This document shows positions 7,016 to 59,851 of a stretch of 64,000 nt of DNA, piece by piece. The position numbers and the translations under genes are program-made. Every line of letters starts with the position of its first letter. The stretch's first letter is position 1. The notes below the pieces were generated by a model, which was given only the letters and a program-made list of their open reading frames with translations, was not told the DNA's origin and did not search any database. The stretch spans positions 186,001-250,000 of IMG/VR virus record IMGVR_UViG_3300005056_000001, one strand, 5' to 3'.

Positions 7016-7228
7016 ATGGAAATAACACTCAAGTCGGTAATAACTTACAGGCAACGTATCGAATTTGGACTAGTAATCGCCAAAGAAATTCTTGGCCATG
7101 ATTATGAATGGAACGAGATGTCGGATATATTGGATATGGATATAAGTTATTCGTATATCATAGCCGAAGATGTTTTTGAATACATGGACTGTACCGAGGA
7201 TGTTTATGACGAAATCATTAAAAAAAAT
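7016..7228 (+). pseudogene. 5' part of a hypothetical gene interrupted by the IS1595 element
   Basis: ORF runs into the left terminal inverted repeat; a plausible remainder (IKEKTPLSAAEKAC...) lies at 11317-11457. Confidence 0.65.
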
Positions 7229-7278
7229 GGCAATTACATACCTTTTTACACCAAATAAATAACAGTACAGACAATAAC

Positions 7279-7320
7279 GATAAAAGCCCCAACCTATCCG
7301 AATAGGTTGTGGCTTTTATC
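7279..7320 (-). terminator. terminator of the lipoprotein gene
   Basis: GATAAAAGCC..AACCTAT / ATAGGTT..GGCTTTTATC inverted repeat. Confidence 0.7.
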
Positions 7321-7336
7321 TATTTTAATCAATTAT

Positions 7337-8125
7337 CTACTGAACAGCATCCAACATCAACATTTGAATCTTATTCATTCTAACCATTTGCTTTGTAGTT
7401 AAATCATCAGATGAAGTTTGTAGTTTATTTGAAAACTTCGTAGCCTTCTCCATAAGTGCAGGGTATTCACCTAGAGCAGAAGGATCACCGTCCATTGCTT
7501 TTCTGTACACAGAAACGTACTTCTTAGTGTAATCTTCATACTCATCCAACACTTCATCCCACTCAGTTGACGAACTAACCACAGGAGTTGAATTAGAACT
7601 ATTAGATGCGACTTTAGATACCACATTTTCTTTTAGGCTAGATGTTAGTCTTACTGTCTTTGCCTTTGAAGGATCCACAATCAACCCTTTGTCATAAATC
7701 ATAAACTCAAGCCAAATAGTTTCGCCCTCATTTAGTGATAGACATTGTTCAAACGGTTTTGTACCATACTTACCTAAATTCGTTACAATTGGGGAGCCCG
7801 AAACATCCATGATATCGGCATTGATACAATATTCATTTGACTTCCCTGCACCCACGCCACAATATTGGACATCGTTAACGTCAAAAGTAAAATCCTTGTC
7901 TGTACGCTTAATCTCGACCAACAGCTTATGCCCATAGGCACTTGCCGCAATATTCAAACTTGAATTTACAATCTCAAAATTTGAGGATAAGGCACCATTC
8001 ATTAATTGAGTGACTTCTAGCTTAGTGTTACTTGCCTTTAACTCTTCTTTTTTGGTTTCACCACCACAAGAAATAAGGAATAACAATATCATTAATACCC
8101 CAAAAACATTTTTTAAACTTTTCAT
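7337..8125 (-). CDS. lipoprotein, DUF6591-like C-terminus (IS cargo)
   Basis: Lipobox LISC after a signal peptide; C-terminal WDEVLDEYEDY..Y helix resembles DUF6591 (recalled, not searched). Confidence 0.75.
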   Translation of the reverse strand: MKSLKNVFGVLMILLFLISCGGETKKEELKASNTKLEVTQLMNGALSSNFEIVNSSLNIAASAYGHKLLVEIKRTDKDFTFDVNDVQYCGVGAGKSNEYCINADIMDVSGSPIVTNLGKYGTKPFEQCLSLNEGETIWLEFMIYDKGLIVDPSKAKTVRLTSSLKENVVSKVASNSSNSTPVVSSSTEWDEVLDEYEDYTKKYVSVYRKAMDGDPSALGEYPALMEKATKFSNKLQTSSDDLTTKQMVRMNKIQMLMLDAVQ

Positions 8126-8626
8126 ATTATGTTATTTGTTACTTTTGGAGGCAAAAAGCGGAATGTTTAGGTTGAAATCAAAATGGTAAAAAAGAAGGCG
8201 TACCCCCTGCATAATTCCAATGCCTGATAGGTACGACCAAGCACCCAACACAATTGAAATAGCAATGAGGACACGCCCATAGTGGCGCATCATCAGTCAT
8301 TCTCTTGTGTTATATTAAAATTGGTCGTTTTATCAAGCAAGAAATGTCCGCAACGCAAACTCTTTATATATTATATGGTCTTATCTTTTATTCGATAGTT
8401 CTATTTTTGGTTTAAAATGGGCACAACATTGTCTCCACTTCTGTATTCATAAATACAAAAGTATACTATTTTTATGGAATTAGAAAACACTTGGCTGTGT
8501 TTTTAGTTCGTTTAGTGAAATTAATTGTTTGAATAGTTAGTTAAGTCGTTGGTAGGCATAAAAAAACTCGCCCATTTTAGCATTGTTAAGTGGCTTGGCG
8601 AGTGTGTTGGTTCTTTATTAAATGTA

Positions 8627-8809
8627 CTACATGATTGGAATATCAAGCTGTTTACATATTAACTCACCTAAACTCCTATCAATTGTTGTATGTCTAGGAA
8701 CAGAAGTTTTCTTACCCACTGAATTTTTCCATATAGCGTGTTTTTTACCATTTCTATGAAAAACGCAATCATTACTTGTTAAATGCTTAAGAAACTTTGT
8801 TGTTTTCAA
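8627..8809 (-). CDS. hicA: HicA-family toxin (mRNA interferase)
   Basis: GKKHAIW, SVPRH and ICKQLDIP motifs; TTG start at 8809 preferred over 8833. Confidence 0.85.
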   Translation of the reverse strand: MKTTKFLKHLTSNDCVFHRNGKKHAIWKNSVGKKTSVPRHTTIDRSLGELICKQLDIPIM

Positions 8810-8819
8810 ATCAAAAATA

Positions 8820-9047
8820 TTAGTTACAAGCACTTAATGTATACAATTCTTCTTCTTTTGTGGTATTATCAGTCTCAGATTCATTATATTCATCTCGAAC
8901 ATCTTCAAGATGTAATTCTAACGCATCTTGTATATTCTCCAATAACCCTGCACGTGTCTTACCTTGGGACATAACCGCAGGAATTTCCTTTAATTGCCCA
9001 ATTAAAAAACCGTCAGCCCCTTCTTTAATCATTAATGTAATTTTCAT
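8820..9047 (-). CDS. hicB: HicB-family antitoxin (short, no DNA-binding domain)
   Basis: EIPAVMSQGKT..LLENIQDALEL motif; adjacent to hicA. Confidence 0.85.
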   Translation of the reverse strand: MKITLMIKEGADGFLIGQLKEIPAVMSQGKTRAGLLENIQDALELHLEDVRDEYNESETDNTTKEEELYTLSACN

Positions 9048-9182
9048 CTTTTTAGATTTTTTTAGATTTTTAGATGTTGACTTACTTAATATAAGTACAT
9101 TTATTGACAATAACGAAATAATGTACCCAATTCGTTCAATTTAATACAACATTAACATTTATTTTATGGTTTATGTACAAAA

Positions 9183-10152
9183 TTAACCCTTCTTAGGATT
9201 AAAATTCAAAGCTTTAGTCATATTTTTATCAAATGTCGTCAATTTCTCTTCTTCAATAGGTTCAATTGTTTGTCCTTCTTTATTGAAGTCAAACGGTAAA
9301 GACAATTGCCCCATTTTTCGTTGATTCAACTTTTCAAATTGCGACCACATTTGCTGCATATTATCAGACAATTGGAACAATGTAATAATTTGGTTGATTT
9401 GAGCCGTTAAATTGGGGTGTCCTACGTCAGTAGTAAGACTTTGATGAAACTTGGCTGTATACTTACCATTTTTACTCTTGGGGGTCTTCTTTTTTATTTC
9501 CGATAATATATTCGGTGGTAATTGTTCATATATCAGCTTATTTGTCCATTTACCGACAACACCTGGGCGTTTTTTAATTCCTTTTACTGTAAAATCCCAA
9601 CCATTTAATCTAAATAACTCTTTATAAAAAATATCAGGGAAACGTTTTTGCCACGGTAGAAGTTCTTCACTAATATAAGCCTTTAATAATTTTTGTAACT
9701 CATCTTTCTCCCTATCGTATTGGTATCCTGTTGCCTCGTCAATAACAGCAAGTATACCAATCTTAGCGAACGCACGGGTTAATACTTCCGCTTGTTCTGC
9801 GGTATCTATATATTTTTCGGGAATGAGTCCAACTTTTCTAGCTTCTAACAACATGTCACAGAGTTCAACCAATACAGTAGCCTCATATCCATTAGCAGAA
9901 AGTCCACTGTTTGTTTTAAATTCAATAGGAGAAAATACACCAGCTTTCAACTCTTCATTAATAAGCGATTGAAAGCTTTTGTTTTTAACCATACTAGGGA
10001 TTTTACTTCCCCTAGTCTGTCCTAACTTAAATGCTGTTTGTAGCCCTCTTCCCGAAAGAACTCTACGTCCATCACTTAAAACATAACAAGGAATTGATAA
10101 GTCACCAATCTCTATTTCACCATAGTGGGTCGATTTTAGTCTATCAGTCTTC

Positions 10153-10154
<2 letters not shown>
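9183..10154 (-). CDS. P63C domain protein
   Basis: CYVLSDGRRVLS, GILAVIDEATGYQ, LLPWQKRFPD and PGVVGKWTN motifs. Confidence 0.88.
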
Positions 10155-10191
<37 letters not shown>

Positions 10192-10276
10192 ACAATTTTT
10201 GCCCAGTCGCAAGTAGTTGATTAATATTAGTTTATGTGCATTTGATCATTATCTATATATATAGATATTGCCCAAC

Positions 10277-11245
10277 CTAAAAAGGTAAAACAAACTCCTC
10301 ACTCCCCTTAATAAGGTTCTTATAAGATGTTCTAATGCCACAATTAGTAAGTAGGTAAGTCATTCGATCGGATTCTATTAAGTCCCTTGTGTTGTATCTG
10401 AATGCGCTTGCATCAACATACATTTGAAGATGTTTCTTAGAAACATGATGATAGATACCAATGATACTTCTCTTTAGCTGTGACCAAAATCCTTCGATAG
10501 TGTTTGTGTGTGCTTTACCAACAACGTATTCTCCTTTACCATGCTTAACGATTTCAACATTATAGGTAAATTTTATACCATTGTAGCCACTCCATTCGTC
10601 CGTGTATACATTCGCATCGCTAGAGATATTTTCTTCTACTAGTGGCGTGATTTCTTTGCTGCTTGTTCCTTCTGTAACCGCTGCCTTAACAATACCGCCA
10701 CGCTCTACCATACCAATAACCGCTACCTTATCTTTAGTGCTTCTACCTTGTGTTCCTTTGGTCTTTTTGTGTTCGTGCTTGTTCTTATTCTTTCCACCAA
10801 CGTAAGTTTCGTCTATCTCAACATCGCCTACCATTTGTGGGTTGTTACCATCAATAGTACCAAAACAAGCTCTTATTCTATGGAGCATGAACCATGCAGT
10901 TTTTTGAGTAACTTTAATGTCTTTACCTAGTTGAATAGAAGAGATTCCTTTTTTGTGAGATGTAACCAACCAAATACCAAGAAACCATTTTTGTAGACCG
11001 ATTTTGGTGTTGTCAAACATTGTTCCTGTTTTGACGTTAAAATACTTAGCAGTATTTTTGCACTTATAACGGTTCCCTTTACAATTATATACCTTAGAGT
11101 CGGCATCAAATGGAGATATTGGATTGTTGTTCCAACGAAGTGTTTCTAAATAATCTATACATAACTGCTCATTTGAGAAAGTAGTTAGTAGGTCTATTAT
11201 TGAGTTAAATTCTGTTCCTAATATCATAAGAGGTATATTTAGCAT
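10277..11245 (-). CDS. IS1595-family (ISXO2-like) DDE transposase
   Basis: VEIDETYVGG, VYTDEW and HTNTIEGFWS motifs; N-terminal Zn-ribbon remnant. Confidence 0.93.
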   Translation of the reverse strand: MLNIPLMILGTEFNSIIDLLTTFSNEQLCIDYLETLRWNNNPISPFDADSKVYNCKGNRYKCKNTAKYFNVKTGTMFDNTKIGLQKWFLGIWLVTSHKKGISSIQLGKDIKVTQKTAWFMLHRIRACFGTIDGNNPQMVGDVEIDETYVGGKNKNKHEHKKTKGTQGRSTKDKVAVIGMVERGGIVKAAVTEGTSSKEITPLVEENISSDANVYTDEWSGYNGIKFTYNVEIVKHGKGEYVVGKAHTNTIEGFWSQLKRSIIGIYHHVSKKHLQMYVDASAFRYNTRDLIESDRMTYLLTNCGIRTSYKNLIKGSEEFVLPF

Positions 11246-11499
11246 TCGGTTGAATACAAATATATGTCTTATTTTACACTAATACAAGTTTTGGTGTAAA
11301 AAGGTATGTAATTACCAAAAAAATAAAAGAAAAGACTCCCTTGTCTGCTGCCGAAAAGGCGTGTATTGCAGACTGTGATGTGTGTTATGTGGTGGACATA
11401 TACCTGTTGTATAGACTCGGGAGTAACGGAGAAGTCTTGGTGTATAGGAAAGGTTAAAAATGTTCTCAAGGATTAATTTGAAAATAATTGGCAAAAGTA

Positions 11500-37016: not shown

Positions 37017-40000
37017 ATGAAAGAAGTAACAAAACCATCGGTGAAGGTGCATTCCTACACCTTTGACCATGCATTGGCAACATCCACCAAATATTTTAAG
37101 GGTGACGTGTTGGCGGCCACCGTTTGGATTAACAAGTATGCATTAAAAGATTCCGAGGGTAATATTTACGAGAGTACCCCCGACCAAATGCATCATAGGT
37201 TGGCTCGTGAATTGGCTCGTGCCGAGGGCAAGTATCCGAATCCCATACCCGAGGAAGAAATATATGGCCTAATCAAGGATTTTGGGTATTTGGTGCCACA
37301 GGGGAGTCCTATGGCAGGGATCGGGAATAATTATCAGGTTGTGTCTATTTCCAATTGCTTTGTTATTGGTAACGAATCGGATTCTTATGGAGGGATCATG
37401 AAGGATGACGAGGAGTTAATCCAATTACAGAAGCGGAGGGCAGGAGTCGGTGAGGACTTATCACACATTAGACCAAAGGGATCACCCGTAAAAAATGCCG
37501 CAATAAGTTCGACAGGAATCGTTCCGTACATGGAGCGTTATTCTAATTCGACAAGAGAGGTTGCGCAGGGAGGACGTAGATAAAGTAATCATTATTACCA
37601 TGAGAAAATATATAGAGTATTATGGAAAAGGAAAATTTAATAGCACATTTAAGACTAGAATTATCTTATAGAGACATTGCCAAGATCGAAAAATGCAGCT
37701 CAAGCAAAGTTAAGTATTGGGTTAATAGACACAATATCAAATTTGAGTCGAAGTTTAATAGAGAATATCAGAAAAGTGTCAACCACAACCTATTCAACAA
37801 GATTGATGACATTAATTTGGCATACATAACAGGCTTTGTTCTTGGGGACGGTTATATAAATAGCAATTATGATGTCAACCTCACTGTTGCCCTAAAGGAT
37901 GCAATTCTTTTGGAAGACATAAATAAGTATATTACATGGGATTGCAAGATCGCATATGACCGCACATTAGACACAACAAAAAGGAGATTTCCTAGCTGTC
38001 GATTGTGTGTCAGAAGCAGAGGTGTTGGAAAGGATCTGACAAAACATTTGGGTGGAAGGCTTAAGCCTGACAGACACACACCAATAGTTTCAAAAGGATT
38101 AGAGCCTTATCTTGTGGCGGGTTTATTTGATGCCGATGGTTGTATAACTTGGGGGTACCGAAAGGACAGAAACCGATTATGGCAAAAAATTTCGTTCACG
38201 TCTCCAATTGGGATATTAATAGGTGTTCAAAAAATACTTATTAAGTATGAAATTTCGACTATCATCAGACCAAAGGCGCATGAAGAGGTGTCTATAATCG
38301 AGTTCGCAAGCAAAAAAGATGTTATTAAATTTTATCGTATGCTGCCAAAAGATGGTATACGCCTTGAAAGAAAGGTAATCAAATTCGACAAATTAATTAA
38401 AGAGTTTGGGTTACCAATAAAATGATTATGACGCTCCCTTGCGTCTTGAATCGGATGAATTCGGTGGAGAGCTTCGTTTGAAGAGAATACCGAGCCAAGC
38501 TTCACAAGCGTGTGAGGAAGGTGTAGAGACTAGGTGGTGTGACACGAACTTGTCATGTAATACACCAATAGCGTCCGAGCCATTAAAATGGTGAGATATA
38601 GTCCATGTATGAGGGGAGCATTAATGTTAACGCTATCAATTGAACATCCTGATGCCGAGGATTTCATTGATGCAAAGGTTGACGGTACAAAGGTGACGGG
38701 TGCAAATATTTCACTTAGAGTCACGGACAATTTTATGAATGCCGCAAAATCAAATTCTGTATTTGTACAACAGTATCCGATTGGTTCCGAGAACCCGATG
38801 GTGAAAAAGCATATTGTTGCCAAGGATCTTTGGGACAAGATGATGTATAACTCGTGGAGTCGTGCCGAGCCAAGTATATTATTTTGGGACACAATAATAC
38901 GGGAGTCGATTCCTGATTGTTATGCAGACTTGGGCTTTAAGACCATTTCTACCAATCCTTGTGTGGTTGGTGATACGTTAGTAAAGACCGACAAAGGTGA
39001 TCTGACGGTCGAAGAAATTGTTGAGCGATTTTTAGACAATGAAGATTTTGAAATATTATCCTACAATATCGAAACCGATAAATTTGAATATAAAAAATTG
39101 CTGAATGCTTTACTTACAAAGCACGATGCCGATGTAATTAATATTAAGACGCAATGTGACAAACAGGTTACTTTAACCCCTGACCACAAAGTGTATACCG
39201 AACAGGATGGTTGGGTTGAGGCACAGAATTTGACAATCGACCATACCCTAATCATACACACTGAAGGCGATATTAGTGCACATACATTTTTGATCGAAAA
39301 TATTGAAGTTGGACAAGAAGATGTCTATGATTTGACTGTGGAAGATAATCACAACTTCTTGGCTAACAACGTGTTAATTAAAAATTGTGGCGAAATTCCA
39401 TTATGTGCAAAAGATAGCTGCCGATTGTTGGCCATTAACTTATACTCTTTTGTAGACAAGCCATTTACCCCACAGGCATCCTTCGATTTTGAGAAGTTTG
39501 TTAAGTACACAAATATTGCACAACGGCTGATGGACGATATTGTTGAAATTGAATTGGAGAAGATTGATGCCATACTAGAAAAAATAAATACGGATCCCGA
39601 AAGTGATAAAATAAAATCCACAGAGAAAAATCTTTGGATGGACATCAAGGAAAAGTGTAAAATGGGCCGTCGAACAGGTCTAGGAATAACCGCCGAAGGA
39701 GACATGTTGGCAGCACTAGGGATTCGATACGGAACAAAAGAAGCAACAACGTTTTCGACAAAGGTACACAAAACACTTGCACTTAGTGCGTATCGCTCGT
39801 CTGTAACCATGGCACAAGAACGTGGAGCATTCCCGATTTACGAATCTTCTCGTGAAGTAGATAATCCGATGATTCAACGAATCAAGGAGGTCGACGAGGA
39901 TTTGTACAATGACATGGTAAAGTATGGAAGGCGTAATATTGCCTTGCTAACAATTGCCCCCGCAGGAACCACGTCCATGATGACACAGACATCATCAGGT

Positions 40001-41029
40001 TTTGAGCCCGTGTTTATGGTGAGCTATAAAAGGAGACGCAAGATTAATCCAAATGATACCAACGTAACTGTTGCGTTTGTTGATAAGGTCGGAGACTCAT
40101 GGGAGGAATACAACGTTTTTCATCATAAGTTTATCACATGGCTAGAGGTTAATGATTACGATGTTGACGAGGTTACCAAAATGAGCCAAGAAGATTTGGA
40201 CATTATTATCTCACAATCGCCATACCACGAGGCAACTGCACATCATGTTGATTGGGTAGAAAAAATTCGTATGCAAGGAAGTATCCAAAAGTGGGTGGAT
40301 CATTCCATTAGTGTGACTGTAAATGTTCCTGAAGATTGTACACAAGAACAGGTAAGTGAAATCTATATGACAGGATGGGAGCATGGATGTAAGGGTGTGA
40401 CAATATATCGTGAGGGCTCTCGTAGTGGGGTGCTAATCTCAAACGACGACAAGAAAGACAAGGTCGAAAAAGTCTTCCTTGAAAACAATGCCCCGAAACG
40501 TCCAAAGACATTGGATGCCGAGGTATTTAAATTTAACAACAACAAAGAAAAATGGGTTGCTGTTATTGGTTTGTTGGATGGTCGTCCTTATGAGATTTTT
40601 ACAGGGAAATTGGATAGCTCATTTTCTATACTGTCAAAAGTAGACAGTGGTTGGATTGTAAAACAAAAAGTCAAGGGTGAAAGAGCACGCTACGACTTTC
40701 AATACGAAGACAGCGAAGGGCACAAGACCACGATTGAGGGACTTTCACAATCCTTTAACAAGGAGTATTGGAACTATGCCAAGTTGATTTCGGGTGTGTT
40801 GCGCCACGGGATGCCACTAAATTTTGTGGTTGATATGGTCAATAACCTACACCTGAATGAGGACACGCTTAATACATGGAAAAAAGGAACTGCCCGTGCA
40901 TTAAAACGTTATATTCCTGACGGAACAAAGGCCGCAGGGAATACATGTGGCGACTGTGGCGAGGATGCGCTTGTTTATCAGGAGGGTTGCCTAACATGCA
41001 AAAACTGTGGATATTCTAAGTGTGGATAA
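37017..41029 (+). CDS. nrdJ: class II (adenosylcobalamin-dependent) ribonucleotide reductase; exon 1 37017-37577, exon 2 38612-41029; contains an intein
   Basis: ISNCFVIG, spliced AQGGR/RGALM, TNP/CGE, GRRTGLG, TIAPAGT and C-terminal CxxC..CxxCG motifs. Confidence 0.93.
37578..38611 (+). other. group I self-splicing intron in nrdJ
   Basis: 5' exon ends in U, intron ends in G; core elements AATACCGAGCC, GTAGAGACTA and GATATAGTCC; internal guide GCGTCTT at 38441-38447; removal restores GGRRGALM. Confidence 0.92.
37622..38425 (+). CDS. intron-encoded double-motif LAGLIDADG homing endonuclease
   Basis: YITGFVLGDG and LVAGLFDADG motifs; N-terminal HTH-like segment. Confidence 0.9.
   Translation: MEKENLIAHLRLELSYRDIAKIEKCSSSKVKYWVNRHNIKFESKFNREYQKSVNHNLFNKIDDINLAYITGFVLGDGYINSNYDVNLTVALKDAILLEDINKYITWDCKIAYDRTLDTTKRRFPSCRLCVRSRGVGKDLTKHLGGRLKPDRHTPIVSKGLEPYLVAGLFDADGCITWGYRKDRNRLWQKISFTSPIGILIGVQKILIKYEISTIIRPKAHEEVSIIEFASKKDVIKFYRMLPKDGIRLERKVIKFDKLIKEFGLPIK
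38960..39385 (+). other. mini-intein (142 aa, no endonuclease) in the NrdJ NP/CGE active-site motif
   Basis: Starts CVVGDT; block B TPDH; block F VYDLTV..NHNF; ends KN before C. Confidence 0.92.
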
Positions 41030-41137
41030 TTAATACTTGTTAATATTTTGCTTAAATTTTTTATTTTAATACCACAAAATTTGGTTTATCCATTTTTTGT
41101 GGTATTTTTGTTACTGAACAATGTAAAACACATAATC

Positions 41138-41776
41138 ATGGAAAATTTTGAAACTATTATATTTGAACACTATACCCCACAAATAAAGGTGTTTACAGAC
41201 AAAATGATAGCACGTAATGGATCAAAACATTTACGTGAAGAGCTAAAGTCGCTCAGACTACAAAAGAAAAATGCGCTTGAAACCTGTCATTATCTACATA
41301 ATGACAAAAATCCTAGTGAGCCTAGTAGTCCTGTTGCAGACTTTTTCTACACCCAACTAGGAATAAAGGCACACACATCAACCTTTATTGATGGGGACGG
41401 GATAACAATGGGTTACGGCGACATTGATTCTCATGGTTGGTTTGAATATGCTTGTTCTGCCGATATTATTAAAGAAAAATATGGCACCATGATTTGGAAC
41501 GAGGTCGATTGGTACAATATTCTACCTCACGAAAGAATAACGATACGTTTCACGTTCAATGGAGGCAAGGTCACGAATATACCCAAAACGTTCTATGAAC
41601 AGAACAAAGACTATTGGGATCGACAAATGGCCAACAAGACAATTATTATCAATCAGATTAATAAAAAACCAAATGTAACCACGTCCATGATGACACAGAC
41701 AACAACAGGTATTGAGCCCGTGTTTATGGCGAGCTACAAAAGGAGACGTAAAATCAATCCAAATGAATCAAAGTAG
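41138..41776 (+). CDS. hypothetical protein whose C-terminus is an NrdJ-derived segment
   Basis: Ends TTSMMTQTTTGIEPVFMASYKRRRKINPNESK. Confidence 0.65.
   Translation: MENFETIIFEHYTPQIKVFTDKMIARNGSKHLREELKSLRLQKKNALETCHYLHNDKNPSEPSSPVADFFYTQLGIKAHTSTFIDGDGITMGYGDIDSHGWFEYACSADIIKEKYGTMIWNEVDWYNILPHERITIRFTFNGGKVTNIPKTFYEQNKDYWDRQMANKTIIINQINKKPNVTTSMMTQTTTGIEPVFMASYKRRRKINPNESK
41677..41766 (+). repeat. 90-bp diverged copy of nrdJ 39967-40056
   Basis: Direct alignment. Confidence 0.9.
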
Positions 41777-45893: not shown

Positions 45894-47195
45894 CTACTGC
45901 TTAAGTCCTGTTCCCTTTATATACATTGGTATCGGCGAAGATCCGTTACTGCGCTTATACACGTACTGAAGGTCAACTATATGATACTTCCCGCTTATTT
46001 CAAGTTCGACAATGCCACTCTTTGGCTCAAAGTCTTCCAAGGCATCATCGGAGCTATTCTCGTCGTCTTGGTTTCTAAGCTTGCTGTCTTTAATATTGTG
46101 CACCATCTTAAAATCTGCATTCATACCAACAAACAAATAAGGAGTATACCTGTCAAGCCTGAAATCTATTTCGGTTCCTTGGATTAGGGCATTCTTTATT
46201 TGTTTGTTTTTTGCCGCAATATATCCAAATGAAGCATGAAGATTGTCTCGATCAAACCTTCCGTTGTCTACCGTGTGTTGTCCATCAACACCCATACTAG
46301 ACTCAACCTCCTCCTCGTCTATGCTAATATCCGTGCTACTGTCGCTTGTGTTGTCTGTGTAAATTCCTGTTTTGTAGTTCCTTAAATAGCTGTCTAGGTT
46401 ACTTTTTGAACTCCATGATTCTAACGGGATACCGTCGTCTTCCTCAATTTCTTGTTCATTAGTGACCAATAACTTGAATTTTTCGACTTTTTTACCCACA
46501 GCATTGGTTTCAATATAATATTGGGTGGTGTCTGCAATTGCCTTTCCGTATTGTAAAACAGTCAGGTTTGCATAGGCATCAATGAAGATGTTATAACAGT
46601 CATTGTCAATACTTCCCCTACGTTCTATGTCCATTATTAACGACTCTAAATTTTTGTTGGTGAGCCATAAAGAATCGTCTGAAGGAGTGTCGGTTATGTT
46701 TGTTGCAAATCCGAGTCCACAAAATTCGGCAATTTCCTTGAGTGCATCAAAACTGTTTGTATTTAATCCGTACTGTATCTTTCCTGTCATCTTAGGAACA
46801 TACAATTCGGCACTAAATGTCACACTATCGCTGCCTGCACTACTCCTTTGGCTTGTGATCTTGTAATCATTCTTAATGGCAGAATTAGTGTCGTCCTGTA
46901 GAATAGAAATATAAATTGTCATCAATGAATCCCCTCGGATAAAATCGTCTGTTAATTGGAACCCACGAAGGTTAATGTCGGCATCATCAATAGTAAGCGT
47001 TACGGTAGGAATAAGACTTTCGCCAACATTCAAAACAAATGCTTTTATGTCGTCCTTTTCGAACGTAGTGTCCCCGATCCTGATTAACGGAAACATTGAA
47101 CCAATCTCAGACACATCCTTTTCGTCGCTTCCTTTGTCTTGTCGGACAACGATTTTTTGCGACTCGAGTTTATGCTTAAATTTATTTTCTATCAT
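45894..47195 (-). CDS. probable baseplate hub/tail structural protein
   Basis: 433 aa; GTACATA at 47208-47214; layout reminiscent of gp27/GPD hubs (LEISGKYHIV at the C-terminus). Confidence 0.5.
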   Translation of the reverse strand: MIENKFKHKLESQKIVVRQDKGSDEKDVSEIGSMFPLIRIGDTTFEKDDIKAFVLNVGESLIPTVTLTIDDADINLRGFQLTDDFIRGDSLMTIYISILQDDTNSAIKNDYKITSQRSSAGSDSVTFSAELYVPKMTGKIQYGLNTNSFDALKEIAEFCGLGFATNITDTPSDDSLWLTNKNLESLIMDIERRGSIDNDCYNIFIDAYANLTVLQYGKAIADTTQYYIETNAVGKKVEKFKLLVTNEQEIEEDDGIPLESWSSKSNLDSYLRNYKTGIYTDNTSDSSTDISIDEEEVESSMGVDGQHTVDNGRFDRDNLHASFGYIAAKNKQIKNALIQGTEIDFRLDRYTPYLFVGMNADFKMVHNIKDSKLRNQDDENSSDDALEDFEPKSGIVELEISGKYHIVDLQYVYKRSNGSSPIPMYIKGTGLKQ

Positions 47196-47249
47196 TGTGT
47201 TTTGTATTATGTACCTATAAGAAACGTTAAATAATTAAACGTTATTTAT

Positions 47250-47822
47250 ATGAACAAAGAACAAGAAGAGAATACACACATCCGACAACTATGCCACACA
47301 GACAACTTTGAAATGGCGATGTATATTGACCACGGAAGAGATGGCAATGTCATAGACAACCTCAGAAACGAATACTTTGATATTGTATGGCTCATGGAAC
47401 TGCCCTTAGAAAGGGTATTGTCCACGGACTTTGACAGAAGTCTTGTGAGCGAGAAGTGGATTATAAGGGATGTTATCCCACTCCTGAAAGGACTTGTAAA
47501 TCAACCAACCGAGAAAACTATTACTGTCAGTCATATTTATCAGGCCCTATACAAAAACACATGGATACACAAGTCGTGCAACATTGACGAGACCATAAAG
47601 TATTTAAAGGGCGAACCAACAAACATTGAAGATTTCCACTACAAATATATTAACATTGACCAAAGTAAGGTCACAAGCCTGCTCCTAAAAATAGACAGTA
47701 ATTGGAACAGTGTCTATATGCATATTTTAGGGCAAATGGGCGAATTGATGCCACATGTTAAATTGGCCATGGAAGGTATAGGATTCGTTTTGTATAAGGG
47801 TGAAACACTAAATAAATATTAA
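47250..47822 (+). CDS. hypothetical protein
   Basis: 190-aa ORF. Confidence 0.65.
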   Translation: MNKEQEENTHIRQLCHTDNFEMAMYIDHGRDGNVIDNLRNEYFDIVWLMELPLERVLSTDFDRSLVSEKWIIRDVIPLLKGLVNQPTEKTITVSHIYQALYKNTWIHKSCNIDETIKYLKGEPTNIEDFHYKYINIDQSKVTSLLLKIDSNWNSVYMHILGQMGELMPHVKLAMEGIGFVLYKGETLNKY

Positions 47823-48122
47823 GATACCTTATTATTTTATGAATACTTCGTTGGAATAATAACGTTATGTTTTCTGTGGATTCTAATGTCTACGAATGTA
47901 AACCTAATCGTCCGAACAAGTATTTTCACTAGGCGACTAAAAAATAGAACTATCAAGTAGATGATAGTATAAGTACATATAAAGAGTTTGTGTTGTAGAC
48001 AGTTTGCTTGGTAGTACCCAAGCAGTCATTTTGATCATACAGGGGGTACACATTCTTTTTATCATTTTTATTTTAACCTAAATATTCCGCTTTTCGCCTC
48101 CAAGAGCAGCAAATAACACAGT

Positions 48123-48908
48123 ATGAAAAGTTTAAAAAATGTTTTTTGGGTATTAACGATTCTGTTATTCCTTATTTCTTGTGGTGACGAAACCAAAAAA
48201 GAAAATGAAACGAGCGTTACCAAATTGAATGTTGAGTCTAAAATGACAGGTGGGTTGTCGGATTACTATGAAGTGGTCAATGCCTCATTAAATATTGGAT
48301 CGGGTTCGTTCGACCGCAAACTGTTGGTCGAGGTAAAACGTACTAGTAAAGAATTTGAATTTGATGGTAATGACGTGCAGCTTTGTGGTACAAGCGCAGG
48401 TAAATCTAATGAGTATTGTATCAGTGCCGATATTATGGGCGATTCGGAGTCTCCATTAGCCACCAATTTAGGCAAGTACGGAACAAAACCGTTTGAACAA
48501 TGTTTGTCTTTAAATGCCAATGAAACTATTTGGCTTGTGTTTTTTGTAGATAACAAAGACTTAATCCGCAACCCCACAAAAGCCAAGACCGTTAAATTAA
48601 TCTCTAGCTTTAAAGGAAATGTCGTGTCTAAAGTCGCATCAAATAGCCCTAATTCTACTACTACAACCACTTCTACTGCTGAGTGGGACGAAGTGTTGGA
48701 CGACTATGAAGACTATGCCAAGAGACATGCTTCTGTGCACAAAAAATCAATGGACGGCGAACCTCATGCACTAGGTGAATATATCGACCTTATGACAAAG
48801 GCCACTAGGTTTTCGGAAACGCTAGAAAGTTCATACGATGACTTAACGCCAAAGCAAATTATCAGAATGAATAAGATTCAAGTGTTGACATTGGAACCTG
48901 TTCAGTAA
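48123..48908 (+). CDS. lipoprotein, paralog of 7337-8125
   Basis: LISC lipobox; shared GKSNEYCI, TNLGKYGTKPFEQCLSLN and WDEVLD motifs. Confidence 0.8.
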   Translation: MKSLKNVFWVLTILLFLISCGDETKKENETSVTKLNVESKMTGGLSDYYEVVNASLNIGSGSFDRKLLVEVKRTSKEFEFDGNDVQLCGTSAGKSNEYCISADIMGDSESPLATNLGKYGTKPFEQCLSLNANETIWLVFFVDNKDLIRNPTKAKTVKLISSFKGNVVSKVASNSPNSTTTTTSTAEWDEVLDDYEDYAKRHASVHKKSMDGEPHALGEYIDLMTKATRFSETLESSYDDLTPKQIIRMNKIQVLTLEPVQ

Positions 48909-48931
48909 GTAAGTAAGTAATTGATTTAAAT

Positions 48932-48970
48932 AAAAAGCCGCAAACTATTAAATAGTTTGCGGCTTTTTTT
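48932..48970 (+). terminator. terminator of the second lipoprotein gene
   Basis: AAAAAGCCGCAAACTAT / ATAGTTTGCGGCTTTTT. Confidence 0.8.
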
Positions 48971-48999
48971 GTGTATACTTCTATTTGTTTGGTGTAAAG

Positions 49000-49205
49000 G
49001 GTAGGAATAAGACTTTCGCCAACATTCAAAACAAATGTTTTTATGTCGTCCTTTTCGAACGTCGTGTCCCCGATTCTGATTAACGAAAACATTAAACCAA
49101 TCTCAGACACATCCTTTTCGTCGCTTCCTTTGTCGGACAACGATTTTTTGCGCCTCAAGATTGTGCTTAAATTTATTTTCTATCATTGTGTTTTGTATTA
49201 TGTAC
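49000..49205 (-). pseudogene. frameshifted duplicate of the promoter and 5' end of 45894-47195
   Basis: Direct repeat of 47004-47214 with a 5-bp deletion. Confidence 0.85.
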
Positions 49206-49306: not shown

Positions 49307-50062
49307 ATGAATACTATTACAATTAAACACAGATATAAAGGTGTTGATATCTACATACATACTCAAGAAGAGAATAACGTTAAAGTTACTTTTGAGAAAG
49401 CTGTGAAAGAGGGTGTTGATTTATCGTTTGTTGATATGGAAGGTGTTAATTTGGTAGGTGTTAATTTGGCAGGTGCTAATTTGCGAGGTGCTAATTTTAA
49501 AGGTGCCAATTTACGAGCTGCTAATTTTAAAGGTGCTAATTTACGAGCTGTTAATTTACGAGCTGCTATTTTGGAAGGTGCTAATTTGCGAGCTGCTAAT
49601 TTGCGAGCTGCTAATTTGGAAGCTGTCAATTTGAAATCTGCTAATTTGAAATCTGCTAATTTTCGAGGTACCAATTTGGAAGGTGCTAACTTTAAAGGTG
49701 CTAATTTGCGATGTGCTAATTTGCAAGATGCTAATCTACAAGGCATCAAACACGATCTAGCGGTACCGAAAATAAAAAATCTACACCAAAAAATCGCTGA
49801 TAATGTCACAAAGTCCAACCTAGAAATGTCATATTGGTATAGTACCGATTGTGGAACCACGCATAGTCACGCAGGGCATATAATCCACCTAGCAGGAGAA
49901 GAAGGATATGCTTTAGAACAATCAACATCGACACCTTTAGCCGCAATACTGATTGTGAATAATTCTTCCGAAATTGAAATCCCTGTTGATATGTTTTACA
50001 TTGACAATAAAGCGGCTTTGTTGAATATCAAAGAATTGGCTCGCAAGGAAGCGGAGCTTTAG
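49307..50062 (+). CDS. pentapeptide repeat protein
   Basis: A(N/D)Lxx repeats over roughly 49430-49745. Confidence 0.92.
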   Translation: MNTITIKHRYKGVDIYIHTQEENNVKVTFEKAVKEGVDLSFVDMEGVNLVGVNLAGANLRGANFKGANLRAANFKGANLRAVNLRAAILEGANLRAANLRAANLEAVNLKSANLKSANFRGTNLEGANFKGANLRCANLQDANLQGIKHDLAVPKIKNLHQKIADNVTKSNLEMSYWYSTDCGTTHSHAGHIIHLAGEEGYALEQSTSTPLAAILIVNNSSEIEIPVDMFYIDNKAALLNIKELARKEAEL

Positions 50063-51438: not shown

Positions 51439-51834
51439 ATGAACCTAAAGACATTTAATTATTGTGTTTTAAAGTATTGTCCTTCACATGCATTGGGCGA
51501 GCAGGTCAACATTGGAATATTGTTACTATTCAAAGAGTCCGACACAGCAAGGTTTATTTTCCCAACCAATTTATCCCGCTTGGTTGCTCTTTTTCCTGCC
51601 GTTGACATTAACACATTGGAGAAATACCTAACAAACCTAAGAACAAAGATTGAGGTGTTAACAGAAGGCACCAATATAATGTCACAACTTACTCCAAAAG
51701 AGTTTATCGCTACCAAGGTATTGGTGCCTGATTCTAATAGTCTGTATTTTGACGAATTAAGAACGTCGAAATATGACACAATTGATGCAACAAAAGAGCA
51801 TTATTATAACATGTATTTTGATAGTTATTGCTAA
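51439..51834 (+). CDS. DUF3037-like protein
   Basis: Y.VLKY.P....GEQVNIGILL and RLVALFPAVD motifs. Confidence 0.7.
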   Translation: MNLKTFNYCVLKYCPSHALGEQVNIGILLLFKESDTARFIFPTNLSRLVALFPAVDINTLEKYLTNLRTKIEVLTEGTNIMSQLTPKEFIATKVLVPDSNSLYFDELRTSKYDTIDATKEHYYNMYFDSYC

Positions 51835-51874
51835 AACGACATGCTTTATGTATCTGCTGTCGATTGTAATTATT

Positions 51875-52075
51875 CTACACAAAATAAGTCAAAAGGAATG
51901 GTATAATTGTATCAGTGTCAGATTCGGCACTGTCCACTAAGCCCTTCACTTGTGCAGTAAATGGCACATCACTCAATTTTTCAATCAATGGAAAATCATC
52001 GACCATAGTGGCTTCGGGTGAACTTGTCAATGGAAAATCATCACGTATATTTTTTAATGCCTTATTAATTATCAT
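51875..52075 (-). CDS. small hypothetical protein inside a 281-bp repeat-flanked insert
   Basis: 66 aa with internal DDFPL repeat. Confidence 0.4.
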   Translation of the reverse strand: MIINKALKNIRDDFPLTSSPEATMVDDFPLIEKLSDVPFTAQVKGLVDSAESDTDTIIPFLLTYFV

Positions 52076-52111
52076 ATGTATTTATTACAAAATGTATTTT
52101 GATAGTTATTG

Positions 52112-52564
52112 CTAAAACACAAGCACACCATTCTTCACATCAACCTTAAATTTCTTCTTGGTACTTATGCGACGGTTCGGTAGGGTGCTTTGTCCGTTTA
52201 TAATAATGTCGCCACTTGCCGAGAATGCAGTAACATTACTTTCGATAAACTTTGTCTGAAATTCTTGAATGTCGGTATTGTTCAACATACTGCCAAGGTC
52301 AGGAAGTGCAATGACATCGCCTGTGATCACATCATTGGCGTTTAGTATTTCATTGTATCGCATTATCTGTTCCAAGAAGCTGTGCTGACCATACAGCTCA
52401 CGTGCTATTTTGTCCAAGCGTTTGTTTTCACTTTCCGAAATCTTTAGATAGCCAAGAATAATGACACGTGCATGCTCTATTTCGGTATAGGTGGACAAGA
52501 AGTCGATGTCTTCAATCAACTTCACATCCTCGTGCATTGCCTCTAGGTCGGGTAAATATAGCAT
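52112..52564 (-). CDS. baseplate wedge protein, T4 gp53-like (LysM)
   Basis: RLDKIARELYG.......IMRYN.I.N......GDVIALP. Confidence 0.7.
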   Translation of the reverse strand: MLYLPDLEAMHEDVKLIEDIDFLSTYTEIEHARVIILGYLKISESENKRLDKIARELYGQHSFLEQIMRYNEILNANDVITGDVIALPDLGSMLNNTDIQEFQTKFIESNVTAFSASGDIIINGQSTLPNRRISTKKKFKVDVKNGVLVF

Positions 52565-56689: not shown

Positions 56690-57205
56690 ATGAGAGAATA
56701 CAACATTGTCGAAATCAACCTACACATAATAAAAAACCCAACAACACCCATAGAGCATGGAAACTATGTCAAGGGGTGTTATGATGTCGGATTTTCGCCA
56801 CAAACAGCCGATATAATACTTAAGATCAAGCAGGCTATGCCCTCTGAAATTACCGAATTAATGGTCGAGGAAATCCCTAACGGTGTCAAGTTTTCTGTTG
56901 TTGGTCTAAATATTTATATGGCGGCCACGATGTTGGGGGATGTTTTTTTGATTGGTGGGAAGTCGTCATTGACATCGTTCAGGATCGAAGAACTCCAAAC
57001 CCACACACGGAGTATGGCTAGTGTGGATATAAGGGACATGGTGGGTGCCGAAATTATGCAGACCATCAAAAAAACCAATTGGTTTGGCGAGATATTAGCA
57101 AAGGATTATAGGGAAAGGCTTGTTATGCTCATGGAAGCAGGTCGGTGGCAGTTGGTGATACAACTATTAAAATCATTGGAAATTAAAGACAAATATAAAT
57201 TATGA
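56690..57205 (+). CDS. hypothetical protein
   Basis: 171-aa ORF. Confidence 0.7.
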   Translation: MREYNIVEINLHIIKNPTTPIEHGNYVKGCYDVGFSPQTADIILKIKQAMPSEITELMVEEIPNGVKFSVVGLNIYMAATMLGDVFLIGGKSSLTSFRIEELQTHTRSMASVDIRDMVGAEIMQTIKKTNWFGEILAKDYRERLVMLMEAGRWQLVIQLLKSLEIKDKYKL

Positions 57206-57975
57206 ATATACAACACACAAACGTAAATCTTGAGGTATTGGATGACCAAATAATCAAAAGGATATTGGATATCATTCACAAACAAACACATGGTCTGTGT
57301 ATTGATGTTTACTATGCAAAAACCGAACACGACCTACTTTTAAGGGTGGGACGGTTAGAGATTATCCATATCGGAAACGGTGTGAGTTATTATTTTCCCA
57401 CCAAGGAGACCAACGAACTCGAATGGAAACGTACCATAAGCGGTGATTGGAGTGTGCTGCTTGATTACTTTCATTGTAACAGGGACAAAATAGTGTTATT
57501 ATGGGATCACCGTCCATCTGTCGGATATGTATACAATGAAAAATCTGAGGGTAGAATATTAACACCAAGGTTGTTACTCACAAAGTCCGACATGTTGTTG
57601 ACATCGTATTGGTCGTCATTTGACACATTATATAGTATAATGTGCGGCAGAAAAATCACAACCGTTGTTACTATGCCATCCTTATTCTTTCTGCTTAATG
57701 CCCTGACAGAATTGGATTGTTTTGTAAAAGGTGTTGTCGGTTTTAAGGGGTATAGATTCAATGAAAAACAATTGACCGTCAAGAAATCATACACAAACGA
57801 TTTTGGCAACGGGGATTACCCCAAAGAACTTGTGTCCTGCTCCAATAATATAGAAAGGTTGCACCACCTAACAACAATTGGCACACCAAAGTCTTTTGGC
57901 GACGACAAATATTATGAGTTAGACACCAAACTATTTTTTGGCTGTGAGGGAAAGACTATCATAGAGGCATACTAG
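57202..57975 (+). CDS. hypothetical protein
   Basis: 257 aa; source of the 96-bp duplicate. Confidence 0.7.
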   Translation: MNIQHTNVNLEVLDDQIIKRILDIIHKQTHGLCIDVYYAKTEHDLLLRVGRLEIIHIGNGVSYYFPTKETNELEWKRTISGDWSVLLDYFHCNRDKIVLLWDHRPSVGYVYNEKSEGRILTPRLLLTKSDMLLTSYWSSFDTLYSIMCGRKITTVVTMPSLFFLLNALTELDCFVKGVVGFKGYRFNEKQLTVKKSYTNDFGNGDYPKELVSCSNNIERLHHLTTIGTPKSFGDDKYYELDTKLFFGCEGKTIIEAY

Positions 57976-59529: not shown

Positions 59530-59766
59530 ATGTTTATGAAAAATAAAAATTTCCATCAACCAAGGCTAGAAACATATACAAAAGATCCTGTGTTCTCGGG
59601 GATATATGTAAAGCGATGCAAATGTGGAGCACGACCCTACTACGATCGGATATATCCAAACTTCTCTCATTGGGTTGCTTGTCGATGTGGAGTTAAAGGT
59701 AAATCTGATAAAAACTTACTAAAGGCAATTGAAAATTGGAACAATGGTTCTCTAGTTGGAAATTAA
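59530..59766 (+). CDS. Lar (restriction alleviation)-like zinc-finger protein
   Basis: CKCG...VAC.CG.......AIENWN. Confidence 0.5.
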   Translation: MFMKNKNFHQPRLETYTKDPVFSGIYVKRCKCGARPYYDRIYPNFSHWVACRCGVKGKSDKNLLKAIENWNNGSLVGN

Positions 59767-59851
59767 AGACAAATATAAATTATGAATATACAACACACAA
59801 ACGTAAATCTTGAGGTATTGGATGACCAAATAATCAAAAGGATATTGGATA
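59756..59851 (+). repeat. exact 96-bp copy of 57176-57271
   Basis: Base-by-base identity. Confidence 0.95.

What the first reader, a model, noticed from the sequence alone, without database searches (positions are those of the whole stretch)
47930..49005. Second, domesticated capture of the same lipoprotein cassette
Seen: 48123-48908 is a full-length diverged paralog of the IS-borne lipoprotein. Homology extends through the upstream leader, the terminator and a remnant of the IS end (TTTGGTGTAAA.GGTA near 48988-49003). Transposase, P63C and hicBA are gone, yet the ORF is intact. A GTACATA motif (47973) is present here but absent from the IS copy, which could be chance. Inference: the phage acquired this lipoprotein twice and kept only the lipoprotein from the older event, suggesting selection, for example superinfection exclusion or receptor masking.
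Basis: partly seen in the sequence, partly recalled or inferred. Interest (0 to 1): 0.6.

Follow-up and report, generated by a model that had tools for sequence, protein, structure and literature searches.

The report
Stranded IS-derived lipoprotein gene in phage
A 368-kb marine phage carries a second, diverged but intact copy of a bacterial-type lipoprotein gene that an insertion sequence left behind; it looks like an ordinary accessory gene, and its proposed role in blocking rival phages is untested.

Summary
ORF 48123-48908 (+, 261 aa) is a full-length paralog (66-67% aa, 73% nt) of the lipoprotein at 7337-8125 (-). That copy sits inside an intact 4,088-bp IS1595-family element (7229-11316). 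Homology covers the leader, the terminator and the inner 12 nt of the IS end.

One correction and one addition. The 'GGTA' of the claimed IS remnant belongs to a 206-nt frameshifted duplicate of the 5' end of virion gene 45894-47195. That duplicate (49000-49205) and its original (47004-47214) bracket ORF190 plus the cassette as 93%-identical direct repeats. So the cassette was fixed by illegitimate recombination through the IS end, not by clean transposition. It lies in a 4.9-kb accessory island that splits a baseplate-module gene pair adjacent in Tenacibaculum phage pT24.

The protein belongs to the DUF6591 family of Bacteroidota lipoproteins. It has a signal peptide, a lipobox Cys20, a beta-sandwich, an S/T linker and a three-helix bundle. 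No functional homolog was found. Pairwise dN/dS is 0.155, which argues against long neutral decay but cannot be assigned to the phage-resident period.

GTACATA is a real genome-wide promoter-like core, but this copy has poor flanks and is probably chance. Two captures and a functional gene are plausible. Superinfection exclusion is untested.

The parts
47940..48013 (+). Distal upstream segment homologous to copy A (8408-8331, 74%). Contains the GTACATA heptamer at 47973-47979.
48005..48122 (+). Proximal leader / 5' UTR. It is 86-89% identical to copy A, far above the gene body. No Rfam family and no stable fold.
48123..48908 (+). Lipoprotein gene, copy B (261 aa). Signal peptide, lipobox L-I-S-C with Cys20 (48180-48182), D+3/E+4 after the Cys, beta-sandwich (residues about 29-168), S/T-rich linker, C-terminal three-helix bundle (about 185-260).
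48932..48968 (+). Intrinsic terminator hairpin (17 bp) with an A-run on its left and a T-run on its right, so possibly bidirectional. Homologous to the terminator after copy A.
48988..48999 (+). Remnant of the inner 12 nt of the IS1595-type right inverted repeat (11/12 identical to copy A). The outer 15 nt are missing.
49000..49205 (-). Right direct repeat. A frameshifted (5-nt deletion) pseudo-copy of codons 1-64 of gene 45894-47195 plus 19 nt upstream, including its GTACATA promoter-like core (49199-49205). It points antisense toward the lipoprotein gene.
47004..47214 (-). Left direct repeat. The functional 5' end (codons 1-64) and promoter-like core (47208-47214) of the intact 433-aa virion-module gene.
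47250..47822 (+). ORF190, an ORFan lying between the left repeat and the cassette. It has no family and no homolog apart from itself in 5.8 billion proteins.
45894..47195 (-). 433-aa gene (phrog_35886; homolog of pT24 BPT24_175, PTm1 ORF-246 and PAU gp128/129). It is the donor of the duplicated 5' fragment.
7229..11316 (-). Reference element: an intact IS1595-family IS with 27-bp inverted repeats and an 8-bp target duplication. It carries the transposase (10277-11245), P63C (9183-10154), hicB (8820-9110), hicA (8627-8833) and lipoprotein copy A (7337-8125).

Best explanation
Copy B is a stand-alone, moron-like accessory gene. It encodes a Bacteroidota-type (DUF6591-family) lipoprotein and originated as the passenger gene next to the right end of an IS1595-family transporter IS.

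Shown: the IS-derived part now consists only of leader, ORF, terminator and the inner 12 nt of the inverted repeat. The right junction cuts through the repeat and joins it, at a GGTA microhomology, to a duplicated and frameshifted copy of the first 64 codons plus promoter core of the neighbouring virion gene. The duplicate and its original flank ORF190 plus the cassette as 93%-identical direct repeats. The whole unit lies in a 4.9-kb island of opposite-strand accessory genes. That island separates two baseplate-module genes that are adjacent in phage pT24.

Inferred: the cassette was immobilised by microhomology-mediated illegitimate recombination, not by transposition followed by slow decay. 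It came from an IS lineage long diverged from the intact IS now at 7229-11316, which makes it a separate capture. In the infected Flavobacteriaceae-type host the protein would be exported by Sec and lipidated on Cys20. It would then be sorted to the outer membrane and possibly flipped to the surface, because Asp+3/Glu+4 resemble the Bacteroidota lipoprotein export signal. There it would alter the envelope of the infected cell.

I rate 'functional gene under purifying selection' at about 0.65. Within that, receptor masking or exclusion of other phages (T5 Llp-like, including protection of progeny from debris) is the most likely specific role, but at only about 0.2 overall.
For: - Full-length paralogy, with only two copies in the genome.
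- Contiguous homology through the terminator and spacer into the inverted repeat.
- IS anatomy with repeats and target duplication.
- Direct repeats and a frameshifted gene fragment.
- An identical arrangement in three independent assemblies.
- pT24 synteny: the BPT24_174 homolog is at 52112-52564 and the BPT24_175 homolog at 45894-47195. They are 4 nt apart in pT24 and 4.9 kb apart here.
- A and B are sister sequences at 100/100 support on a long stem.
- dN/dS is 0.155 with dS 1.39.
- B keeps all 34 columns that are invariant across the seven-sequence alignment, including the lipobox Ser-Cys.
- Nearly all family members inspected have an SCGG-type lipobox, and the family is Bacteroidota-dominated.
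- The fold is confident: N-domain pLDDT 96.
- The acidic +3/+4 motif fits the published export signals of Flavobacterium johnsoniae and Bacteroides fragilis (PMC5080379).
- Rough clock (my inference): the pseudo-fragment beside B accumulated 9 substitutions and 1 frameshifting indel in 206 nt. At that rate a neutral 783-nt ORF, in which 5.1% of substitutions create stops, would stay intact with probability of roughly 0.004 to 0.4, depending on assumptions.
Against: - There is no transcript evidence. Only DNA contigs of two metagenomes hold fragments.
- No clear promoter was found. The sigma-70-type scan found no site upstream of B's start codon; its only + strand hits lie inside ORF190 and inside B. 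The phage-type GTACATA copy has poor flanks and lies 150 nt from the ATG.
- B's branch is 2.4 times longer than A's. The excess is about what a neutral period comparable to the repeat divergence would add.
- Pairwise dN/dS cannot be partitioned, because synonymous sites are saturated.
- There is no polymorphism between samples from which to compute pN/pS.
- The protein has no homolog of known function and no informative structural match: best Z 5.1 for the beta-sandwich, and a generic Z 8.8 for the helical bundle.
- No other phage in GenBank or IMG/VR carries a relative, so there is no comparative support for a phage-adaptive role.
Confidence: 0.55

Rival explanations
1. B is a functionless relic that hitchhiked. 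An IS-related rearrangement disturbed the 5' end of the conserved virion gene. Selection acted only on restoring that gene, which produced the duplication. The lipoprotein ORF simply has not yet been hit by a disabling mutation.
For: - The junction lies inside a duplicated fragment of the 433-aa virion-module gene.
- B's branch is longer than A's, and B departs more often from the family consensus: 12 vs 7 sites, including E139V in the conserved WLEF motif.
- No promoter was identified.
- No transcript data exist.
- No other phage carries the family.
Against: - The 261-codon ORF, the lipobox and all invariant residues are intact.
- The adjacent pseudo-fragment already carries a frameshift in only 206 nt.
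- dN/dS is 0.155.
- The relative-rate excess is not significant in 9 of 10 outgroup tests.
- The leader and terminator are conserved.
Confidence: 0.25
2. There was one capture, not two. A single IS lineage resided in this phage lineage for a long time and transposed within it. B is the decayed older copy and A the still-active descendant, so the pair is an intragenomic IS-mediated duplication.
For: - A and B are each other's closest relatives by far: a 0.63 stem, with the next homologs at 39-43% identity.
- None of the bacterial relatives of the IS carries hicBA or the lipoprotein. They are units of about 2.1 kb holding transposase plus P63C.
- The passenger region of IS A starts with a high-scoring phage-type GTACATA promoter-like site right after the P63C stop. 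This suggests a history inside this phage lineage.
Against: - dS of about 1.4 between A and B contrasts with only about 5% divergence between the repeats that date B's fixation.
- IS A looks freshly inserted, with 26/27 inverted repeats and a perfect 8-bp target duplication.
- A long-resident active IS would be expected to leave more copies or scars, yet the genome has one transposase and two lipoproteins.
Confidence: 0.15
3. The direction is reversed. The lipoprotein was a native phage moron at the B locus, and the IS picked it up from phage DNA. B would then be the source rather than a product.
For: - Bacterial IS relatives lack the passenger.
- A phage-type promoter-like site heads the passenger module in IS A.
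Against: - B itself carries the IS-side terminator, the spacer and the inner inverted repeat in contiguous homology, oriented from inside the IS outward. So B must have been inside an IS.
- The terminator-plus-repeat architecture matches what follows P63C in the bacterial IS copies.
Confidence: 0.05

Closest known systems
Phage-encoded exclusion lipoproteins (T5 Llp, phi80/N15 Cor, Streptococcus phage TP-J34 Ltp). Named from general knowledge; not tested here beyond family scans.
   Same: A phage-borne gene for a signal-peptide/lipobox lipoprotein, carried as a self-contained unit with its own terminator. Like Ltp, it has a Ser/Thr-rich spacer and a small helical domain. It would plausibly act at the cell envelope.
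   Different: There is no sequence or fold relationship. At 241 mature residues it is much larger than Llp or Cor. It has a beta-sandwich domain. It belongs to a large bacterial family (DUF6591). No receptor, expression timing or phenotype is known.
DUF6591 (PF20234) lipoproteins of Bacteroidota
   Same: The architecture is the same over the full length, the SCGG-type lipobox is shared, and profile E-values against family members reach 1e-51 to 1e-106.
   Different: - B itself gets no Pfam hit, and A scores 19.7 bits, below the 27.1 cutoff.
- The phage pair sits on a long branch at 39-43% identity to the nearest bacterial members.
- Bacterial members are chromosomal and not IS-linked.
- The function of the family is unknown, and no paper mentions it.
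IS1595-family insertion sequences with passenger genes (transporter IS)
   Same: Copy A's element has the DDE_Tnp_IS1595 transposase, 27-bp inverted repeats and an 8-bp target duplication. Relatives at 57-67% transposase identity occur across Flavobacteriaceae and carry P63C as passenger.
   Different: The B locus has no transposase, only 12 of 27 nt of one repeat, and no target duplication. It is a relic, not an IS. The hicBA-plus-lipoprotein extension was not found in any bacterial or viral relative examined.
Modular cassette shuffling at promoter-bearing repeats in T4-type phages (PeSL model). Recalled from memory as a lead only.
   Same: An accessory segment is bracketed by direct repeats that contain a phage promoter-like core and a gene start. 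The repeat boundary coincides exactly with the outer edge of the GTACATA core.
   Different: Only one clear case is seen here. The repeat is a fragment of a virion gene, not a dedicated regulatory cassette. No circle or excised form was observed.

Membership tests
Bacterial lipoprotein (signal peptidase II substrate) | N-terminal signal peptide ending in a lipobox [LVI][ASTVI][GAS]-C | tested here: met
   Residues 1-20 are MKSLKNVFWVLTILLFLISC. The L-I-S-C lipobox is at 17-20, and Ser19-Cys20 are invariant in the family alignment.
Bacterial lipoprotein (signal peptidase II substrate) | Actual lipidation and membrane anchoring | not testable with these tools
   Needs palmitate labelling or globomycin sensitivity in a host.
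DUF6591 (PF20234) | Pfam model hit above the gathering threshold | tested here: not met
   B has no hit at E<=0.01. A scores 19.7 bits against a cutoff of 27.1.
DUF6591 (PF20234) | Full-length homology to proteins that carry PF20234 | tested here: met
   phmmer E-values of 3.9e-51 to 9e-27 to five PF20234-annotated proteins. A profile search finds 2666 representatives at E<=1e-3. The atlas's nearest clusters are DUF6591.
IS1595-family insertion sequence (status of the B locus) | DDE_Tnp_IS1595 transposase within the element | tested here: not met
   The only transposase in the genome is at 10277-11245.
IS1595-family insertion sequence (status of the B locus) | Two terminal inverted repeats and an 8-bp target duplication | tested here: not met
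   Only the inner 12 of 27 nt of one repeat remain (48988-48999). There is no second repeat and no duplication of the IS type.
Superinfection-exclusion / receptor-masking lipoproteins (Llp, Cor, Ltp) | Sequence or fold homology to a characterised member | tested here: not met
   No PHROG, PADLOC or NCBIfam hit and no Pfam hit above its cutoff. No matching solved structure.
Superinfection-exclusion / receptor-masking lipoproteins (Llp, Cor, Ltp) | Expression in the infected or lysogenic cell, with reduced adsorption or DNA entry of challenging phage | not testable with these tools
   No cultured phage or host, and no RNA runs.
Bacteroidota surface-exposed lipoproteins (lipoprotein export signal) | Acidic residues close to the +1 Cys (positions +3 to +5) | tested here: met
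   Mature B starts C-G-D-E-T-K-K-E, with Asp+3 and Glu+4. A has C-G-G-E. Compare SDDFE and SDDDD in PMC5080379. Surface exposure itself is untested.

The most novel reading that the evidence does not exclude
The IS1595-type element is a phage-adapted transporter IS. Its passenger module (a phage-type GTACATA promoter, hicBA and the lipoprotein) circulates among jumbo phages of marine Flavobacteriaceae. B would be a fixed, selected product of an earlier visit. It would be expressed during infection as a surface lipoprotein that masks the phage's own receptor, excluding competitors and protecting progeny from debris. The promoter-edged direct repeats would mark a general cassette-insertion mechanism in this phage.
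Probability: 0.1. Interest if true: 0.7.

Novelty: new member of a known kind. Interest (0 to 1): 0.4.

Why it matters
Insertion sequences are uncommon in virulent and jumbo phage genomes. This genome holds both an intact passenger-carrying IS and a stranded older passenger of the same gene. That gives a concrete before-and-after picture of how a transposable element can deliver a host-type envelope gene to a phage and leave it behind as a moron.

If the lipoprotein proves to act on adsorption or exclusion, it would be the first such factor described for phages of Bacteroidota. It would also give a first function to the DUF6591 family. As it stands, the locus is a well-documented but functionally open accessory gene.

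Two by-products are likely to be more useful for annotating this phage group than the lipoprotein itself: the genome-wide GTACATA promoter-like motif, and the repeat-bracketed insertions in the island.

Tried and rejected
- RNA element in the conserved leader. No Rfam family was found beyond terminator noise. There is no stable fold (z +0.59) and no covariation. Rejected; the 86-89% conservation of the leader stays unexplained.
- GTACATA as a sign of rewiring to phage transcription. The heptamer is a real promoter-like core. However, the copy at 47973 scores -3.55 on flanks, against 3.24 +/- 3.66 for sites upstream of genes, and lies 150 nt from the ATG. Judged probably chance.
- Function from structure. 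Foldseek and VIA-align were run on the whole model and on the N-domain alone. They gave only generic beta-sandwich (Z <= 5.1) and three-helix-bundle (Z <= 8.8) matches.
- Function from families. PHROGs, PADLOC and NCBIfam gave nothing, and Pfam gave nothing above its cutoff.
- Function from bacterial gene neighbourhood. Contexts were short or inconsistent.
- Distribution. There is no relative of the lipoprotein in GenBank phages or IMG/VR, using a single sequence or the seven-sequence alignment as query. Five Flavobacteriaceae genomes that hold IS relatives gave no hit.
- Ancestral state. The closest relative found (IMG/VR contig L068, 57% identity for the 433-aa gene) shares none of the island genes, so it does not show the empty site.
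- Branch-specific selection. Relative-rate tests were mostly not significant. Codon adaptation does not separate A, B and phage genes. Composition shows no anomaly.
- Expression and excised forms. Only two DNA metagenomes hold short fragments. There are no RNA runs and no junction-spanning contigs.
- Literature. No paper mentions DUF6591.

Only genetic code 11 was used.
Full report
SETTING. The window is bases 186001-250000 of a 368,109-bp virus record with direct terminal repeats. The 433-aa gene next to the finding has its nearest annotated relatives in the jumbo Tenacibaculum phages pT24, PTm1 and PTm5, in Sphingomonas phage PAU and in Chryseobacterium phages. Fragments of the genome occur in a seawater and a subsurface metagenome. 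Relatives of its insertion sequence occur across marine Flavobacteriaceae. A marine Flavobacteriaceae-type host is therefore likely; this is an inference.

THE OBSERVATION. ORF 48123-48908 (+, 261 aa; 'B') and ORF 7337-8125 (-, 262 aa; 'A') are 66-67% identical over their full length. They are the only two copies in the genome.
- DNA homology runs from 48005 to 48998 against 8243-7245 (73.2%).
- A further upstream block, 47940-48013, matches 8408-8331. About 88 nt between the two blocks are present only in A.
- Both genes are followed by homologous hairpin terminators (48932-48968 in B).

Copy A lies in an element with all the marks of an intact IS1595-family IS:
- a DDE_Tnp_IS1595 transposase (E 1.7e-44), a P63C protein, HicB and HicA;
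- 27-bp terminal inverted repeats at 7229-7255 and 11290-11316 (26/27 identical);
- an 8-bp target duplication AAAAAAAT.

No second transposase exists in the genome. After the terminator, B keeps the spacer and the inner 12 nt of the right inverted repeat (48988-48999, 11/12 identical).

From 49000 onward the sequence is not IS. It is a copy of 47004-47214, the first 64 codons plus 19 upstream nucleotides of the 433-aa gene at 45894-47195 (-).
- The right copy (49000-49205) differs from the original by 9 substitutions and a 5-nt deletion that breaks the frame. It is a pseudo-fragment. tblastn with the pT24 homolog hits it separately.
Because the inverted repeat also contains GGTA at that point, the junction looks like a microhomology-mediated illegitimate join that removed the outer 15 nt of the repeat.
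- The two repeats bracket a 1,785-bp segment consisting of ORF190 (47250-47822) and the B cassette. ORF190 is an ORFan with no homolog apart from itself.
- The outer boundary of both repeats coincides exactly with the edge of a GTACATA heptamer (47208-47214 and 49199-49205).
- The arrangement is 100% identical in contigs from three JGI samples. One of those contigs spans both repeats, so it is not a mis-assembly.

WIDER CONTEXT. In pT24 the homologs of window ORF 52112-52564 (-) and of the 433-aa gene are adjacent, 4 nt apart, in a virion module next to head-completion and tail-collar genes. ORF 52112-52564 has baseplate-wedge-like PHROG hits. Here the two genes are 4.9 kb apart. The gap holds + strand accessory ORFs:
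- ORF190;
- B;
- a pentapeptide-repeat protein (49307-50062);
- two ORFans;
- a DUF3037 protein that matches a PADLOC candidate-defence model.

A closer relative (IMG/VR contig L068, 57% identity for the 433-aa gene) has unrelated divergent genes at this position. The site is therefore a variable accessory island, and B is one of its morons.

ORIGIN. The sequences of the bacterial IS copies with recognisable ends (L009, L021) show that P63C is followed by a terminator and then the right inverted repeat. None of the bacterial relatives carries hicBA or the lipoprotein within 6 kb. An IMG/VR contig with a 60%-identical transposase shows no lipoprotein-sized ORF after its P63C-sized ORF.
- In the phage IS, hicBA and the lipoprotein are inserted between the P63C stop and that terminator-repeat module.
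- Since B carries the same terminator-repeat module, B must once have been inside such an extended IS. This rules out the reversed direction, in which the IS copied a native phage gene from the B locus.
- Synonymous divergence between A and B is saturated (pS 0.63, dS about 1.4). The repeats that date B's fixation differ by only about 5%, and IS A looks freshly inserted. Two captures from a diverged pool of lipoprotein-bearing ISs is therefore the simplest reading.
- Long residence of one IS lineage in the phage lineage remains possible. It is hinted at by a strong phage-type promoter-like site heading the passenger module of IS A.

How the 211-nt duplication arose cannot be resolved. Candidate routes are single-crossover integration of a circle bearing the repeat, insertion of a copy of the promoter and 5' fragment next to the IS end, or repair of a disrupted virion gene from a co-infecting relative.

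THE PROTEIN. B has a signal peptide and an L-I-S-C lipobox with Cys20. It has a confidently predicted beta-sandwich (residues about 29-168; pLDDT 96 with a 68-sequence alignment), a Ser/Thr-rich linker and a C-terminal three-helix bundle.
- It belongs to a large family of Bacteroidota lipoproteins that includes DUF6591. There are 2666 representatives at E<=1e-3, and nearly all of those inspected have an SCGG-type lipobox.
- Neither phage copy reaches Pfam's own threshold.
- The nearest bacterial members are 39-43% identical. They are chromosomal, in Flavobacteriales, and not IS-linked.
- No solved structure gives more than a generic match: Z 5.1 for the sandwich and Z 8.8 for the bundle.
- No family library assigns a function, and no paper mentions the family.
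- Mature B begins C-G-D-E. Acidic residues at +3/+4 resemble the lipoprotein export signals described for Flavobacterium johnsoniae (SDDFE) and Bacteroides fragilis (SDDDD) (PMC5080379). Surface exposure is therefore plausible. A has C-G-G-E, and G22D is one of B's departures from the family consensus.

SELECTION. Nei-Gojobori dN/dS between A and B is 0.155 (dN 0.216, dS 1.39). Because dS is saturated, the true ratio is if anything lower.
- B keeps all 34 columns that are invariant in the seven-sequence alignment.
- On a maximum-likelihood tree A and B are sisters (100/100). B's branch is 0.34 and A's is 0.14 substitutions per site.
- Tajima-type relative-rate tests give an excess for B in all ten outgroup comparisons, but it is significant in only one (p 0.045-0.64).
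- This pattern fits purifying selection with some relaxation or adaptation in B. It does not prove selection during phage residence, because most of the divergence may predate capture.
- A rough internal clock helps a little. The adjacent pseudo-fragment acquired 9 substitutions and one frameshift in 206 nt. At that rate a neutral 783-nt ORF, in which 5.1% of substitutions create stops, would survive intact with a probability between about 0.004 (all changes on the pseudo-copy, indel rate taken at face value) and about 0.4 (half the changes, indels ignored). This is my inference from small numbers.
- Codon adaptation and composition do not discriminate.

REGULATION. The leader and signal-peptide region (about 48043-48205) is 86-89% identical between A and B, while the gene body is 50-75% identical and its synonymous sites are saturated. 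No Rfam family, stable fold or covariation explains this. A recombinational mosaic or a promoter/translation-initiation constraint are the remaining options.

- The heptamer occurs 93 times in the genome.
- 54 copies lie 15-70 nt upstream of an ATG-initiated ORF, with an extended context of A/T-A/T-T-[T/G/A], GTACATA, four variable bases, then AAA.
- It precedes the 433-aa gene and a baseplate-wedge gene, among others. It is most likely a phage promoter core.
- B's copy at 47973 has flanks typical of non-promoter occurrences (score -3.55, against 3.24 +/- 3.66 for sites upstream of genes) and sits 150 nt from the start codon. I treat it as probably chance.
- The duplicated fragment at 49000-49205 retains a good copy (score 4.5) that points antisense into B. 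The hairpin at 48932-48968 has an A-run on one side and a T-run on the other, so it could terminate transcription from both directions (inference).

VERDICT. The feature is real and its IS ancestry is well supported. It is best described as an IS-delivered lipoprotein moron stranded by illegitimate recombination in an accessory island. It is probably still functional (about 0.65). Its biochemical role is unknown. Superinfection exclusion or receptor masking is a reasonable but untested guess (about 0.2). It is a new member of known kinds (phage morons, passenger-carrying ISs and Bacteroidota lipoproteins), and it is of moderate interest.

Noticed in passing
whole genome; in the window e.g. 3840, 20111(-), 22517, 30262(-), 35399, 47208(-), 53492(-): GTACATA is a genome-wide promoter-like core. 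There are 93 copies in 368 kb, and 54 of them lie 15-70 nt upstream of an ATG ORF. The extended consensus is A/T-A/T-T-[T/G/A], GTACATA, four variable bases, then AAA. It precedes baseplate and virion-module genes, so it may be a late promoter.
   Followed up: partly
window 9172-9178 (-): A high-scoring copy of the phage promoter-like motif (flank score 8.0) sits 4 nt after the P63C stop inside the IS, heading the hicBA-lipoprotein passenger module. Bacterial relatives of the IS have a terminator and the right inverted repeat at this position. The passenger module may have been shaped in a phage genome.
   Followed up: partly
window 51813-51839 and 52093-52119: A 27-nt direct repeat brackets a 253-bp segment containing a 66-aa ORF on the - strand (51875-52075). 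One copy overlaps the stop of the DUF3037 ORF and the other overlaps the stop of the baseplate-like ORF 52112-52564. This is a second repeat-bracketed insertion in the same island.
   Followed up: no
window 57176-57271 and 59756-59851: A perfect 96-nt direct repeat, 2,580 nt apart, covers 26 nt upstream plus the first 23 codons of two ORFs (57202-57975 and 59782-60246). A third paralog lies at 60838-61227 (300 nt at 84%). This points to recent duplication or conversion among gene starts.
   Followed up: no
window 51439-51834 (+): The 131-aa DUF3037 protein in the island matches the PADLOC candidate defence model PDC-M66B (E 2.2e-15). Its neighbour at 49307-50062 is a pentapeptide-repeat protein.
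   Followed up: no
window 48043-48205 vs 8045-8206: The leader plus signal-peptide region of the two lipoprotein copies is 86-89% identical, while synonymous sites in the rest of the gene are saturated. No RNA family or structure explains this.
   Followed up: yes
window 8244-8330 (-): About 88 nt present only upstream of copy A open a short ORF whose product, by my reading of the sequence, begins MTDDAPLWACPHCYFNCVGC (two CxxC pairs). It is absent from copy B.
   Followed up: no
window 7016-7258 (+): The IS inserted into the 3' end of an 80-aa ORF. The ORF's last codons and its stop are now supplied by the IS inverted repeat.
   Followed up: no
window 39967-40056 and 41677-41766: A 90-nt direct repeat (91% identical) lies within the 813-aa ORF 38588-41029 and at the 3' end of the following ORF, 41048-41776.
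   Followed up: no
window 48862-49158 (-): JGI gene calls include a 98-aa ORF here. It is the frameshifted fragment of the 433-aa gene read through the IS remnant and terminator into the antisense of the lipoprotein 3' end, so it is almost certainly not a gene.
   Followed up: yes
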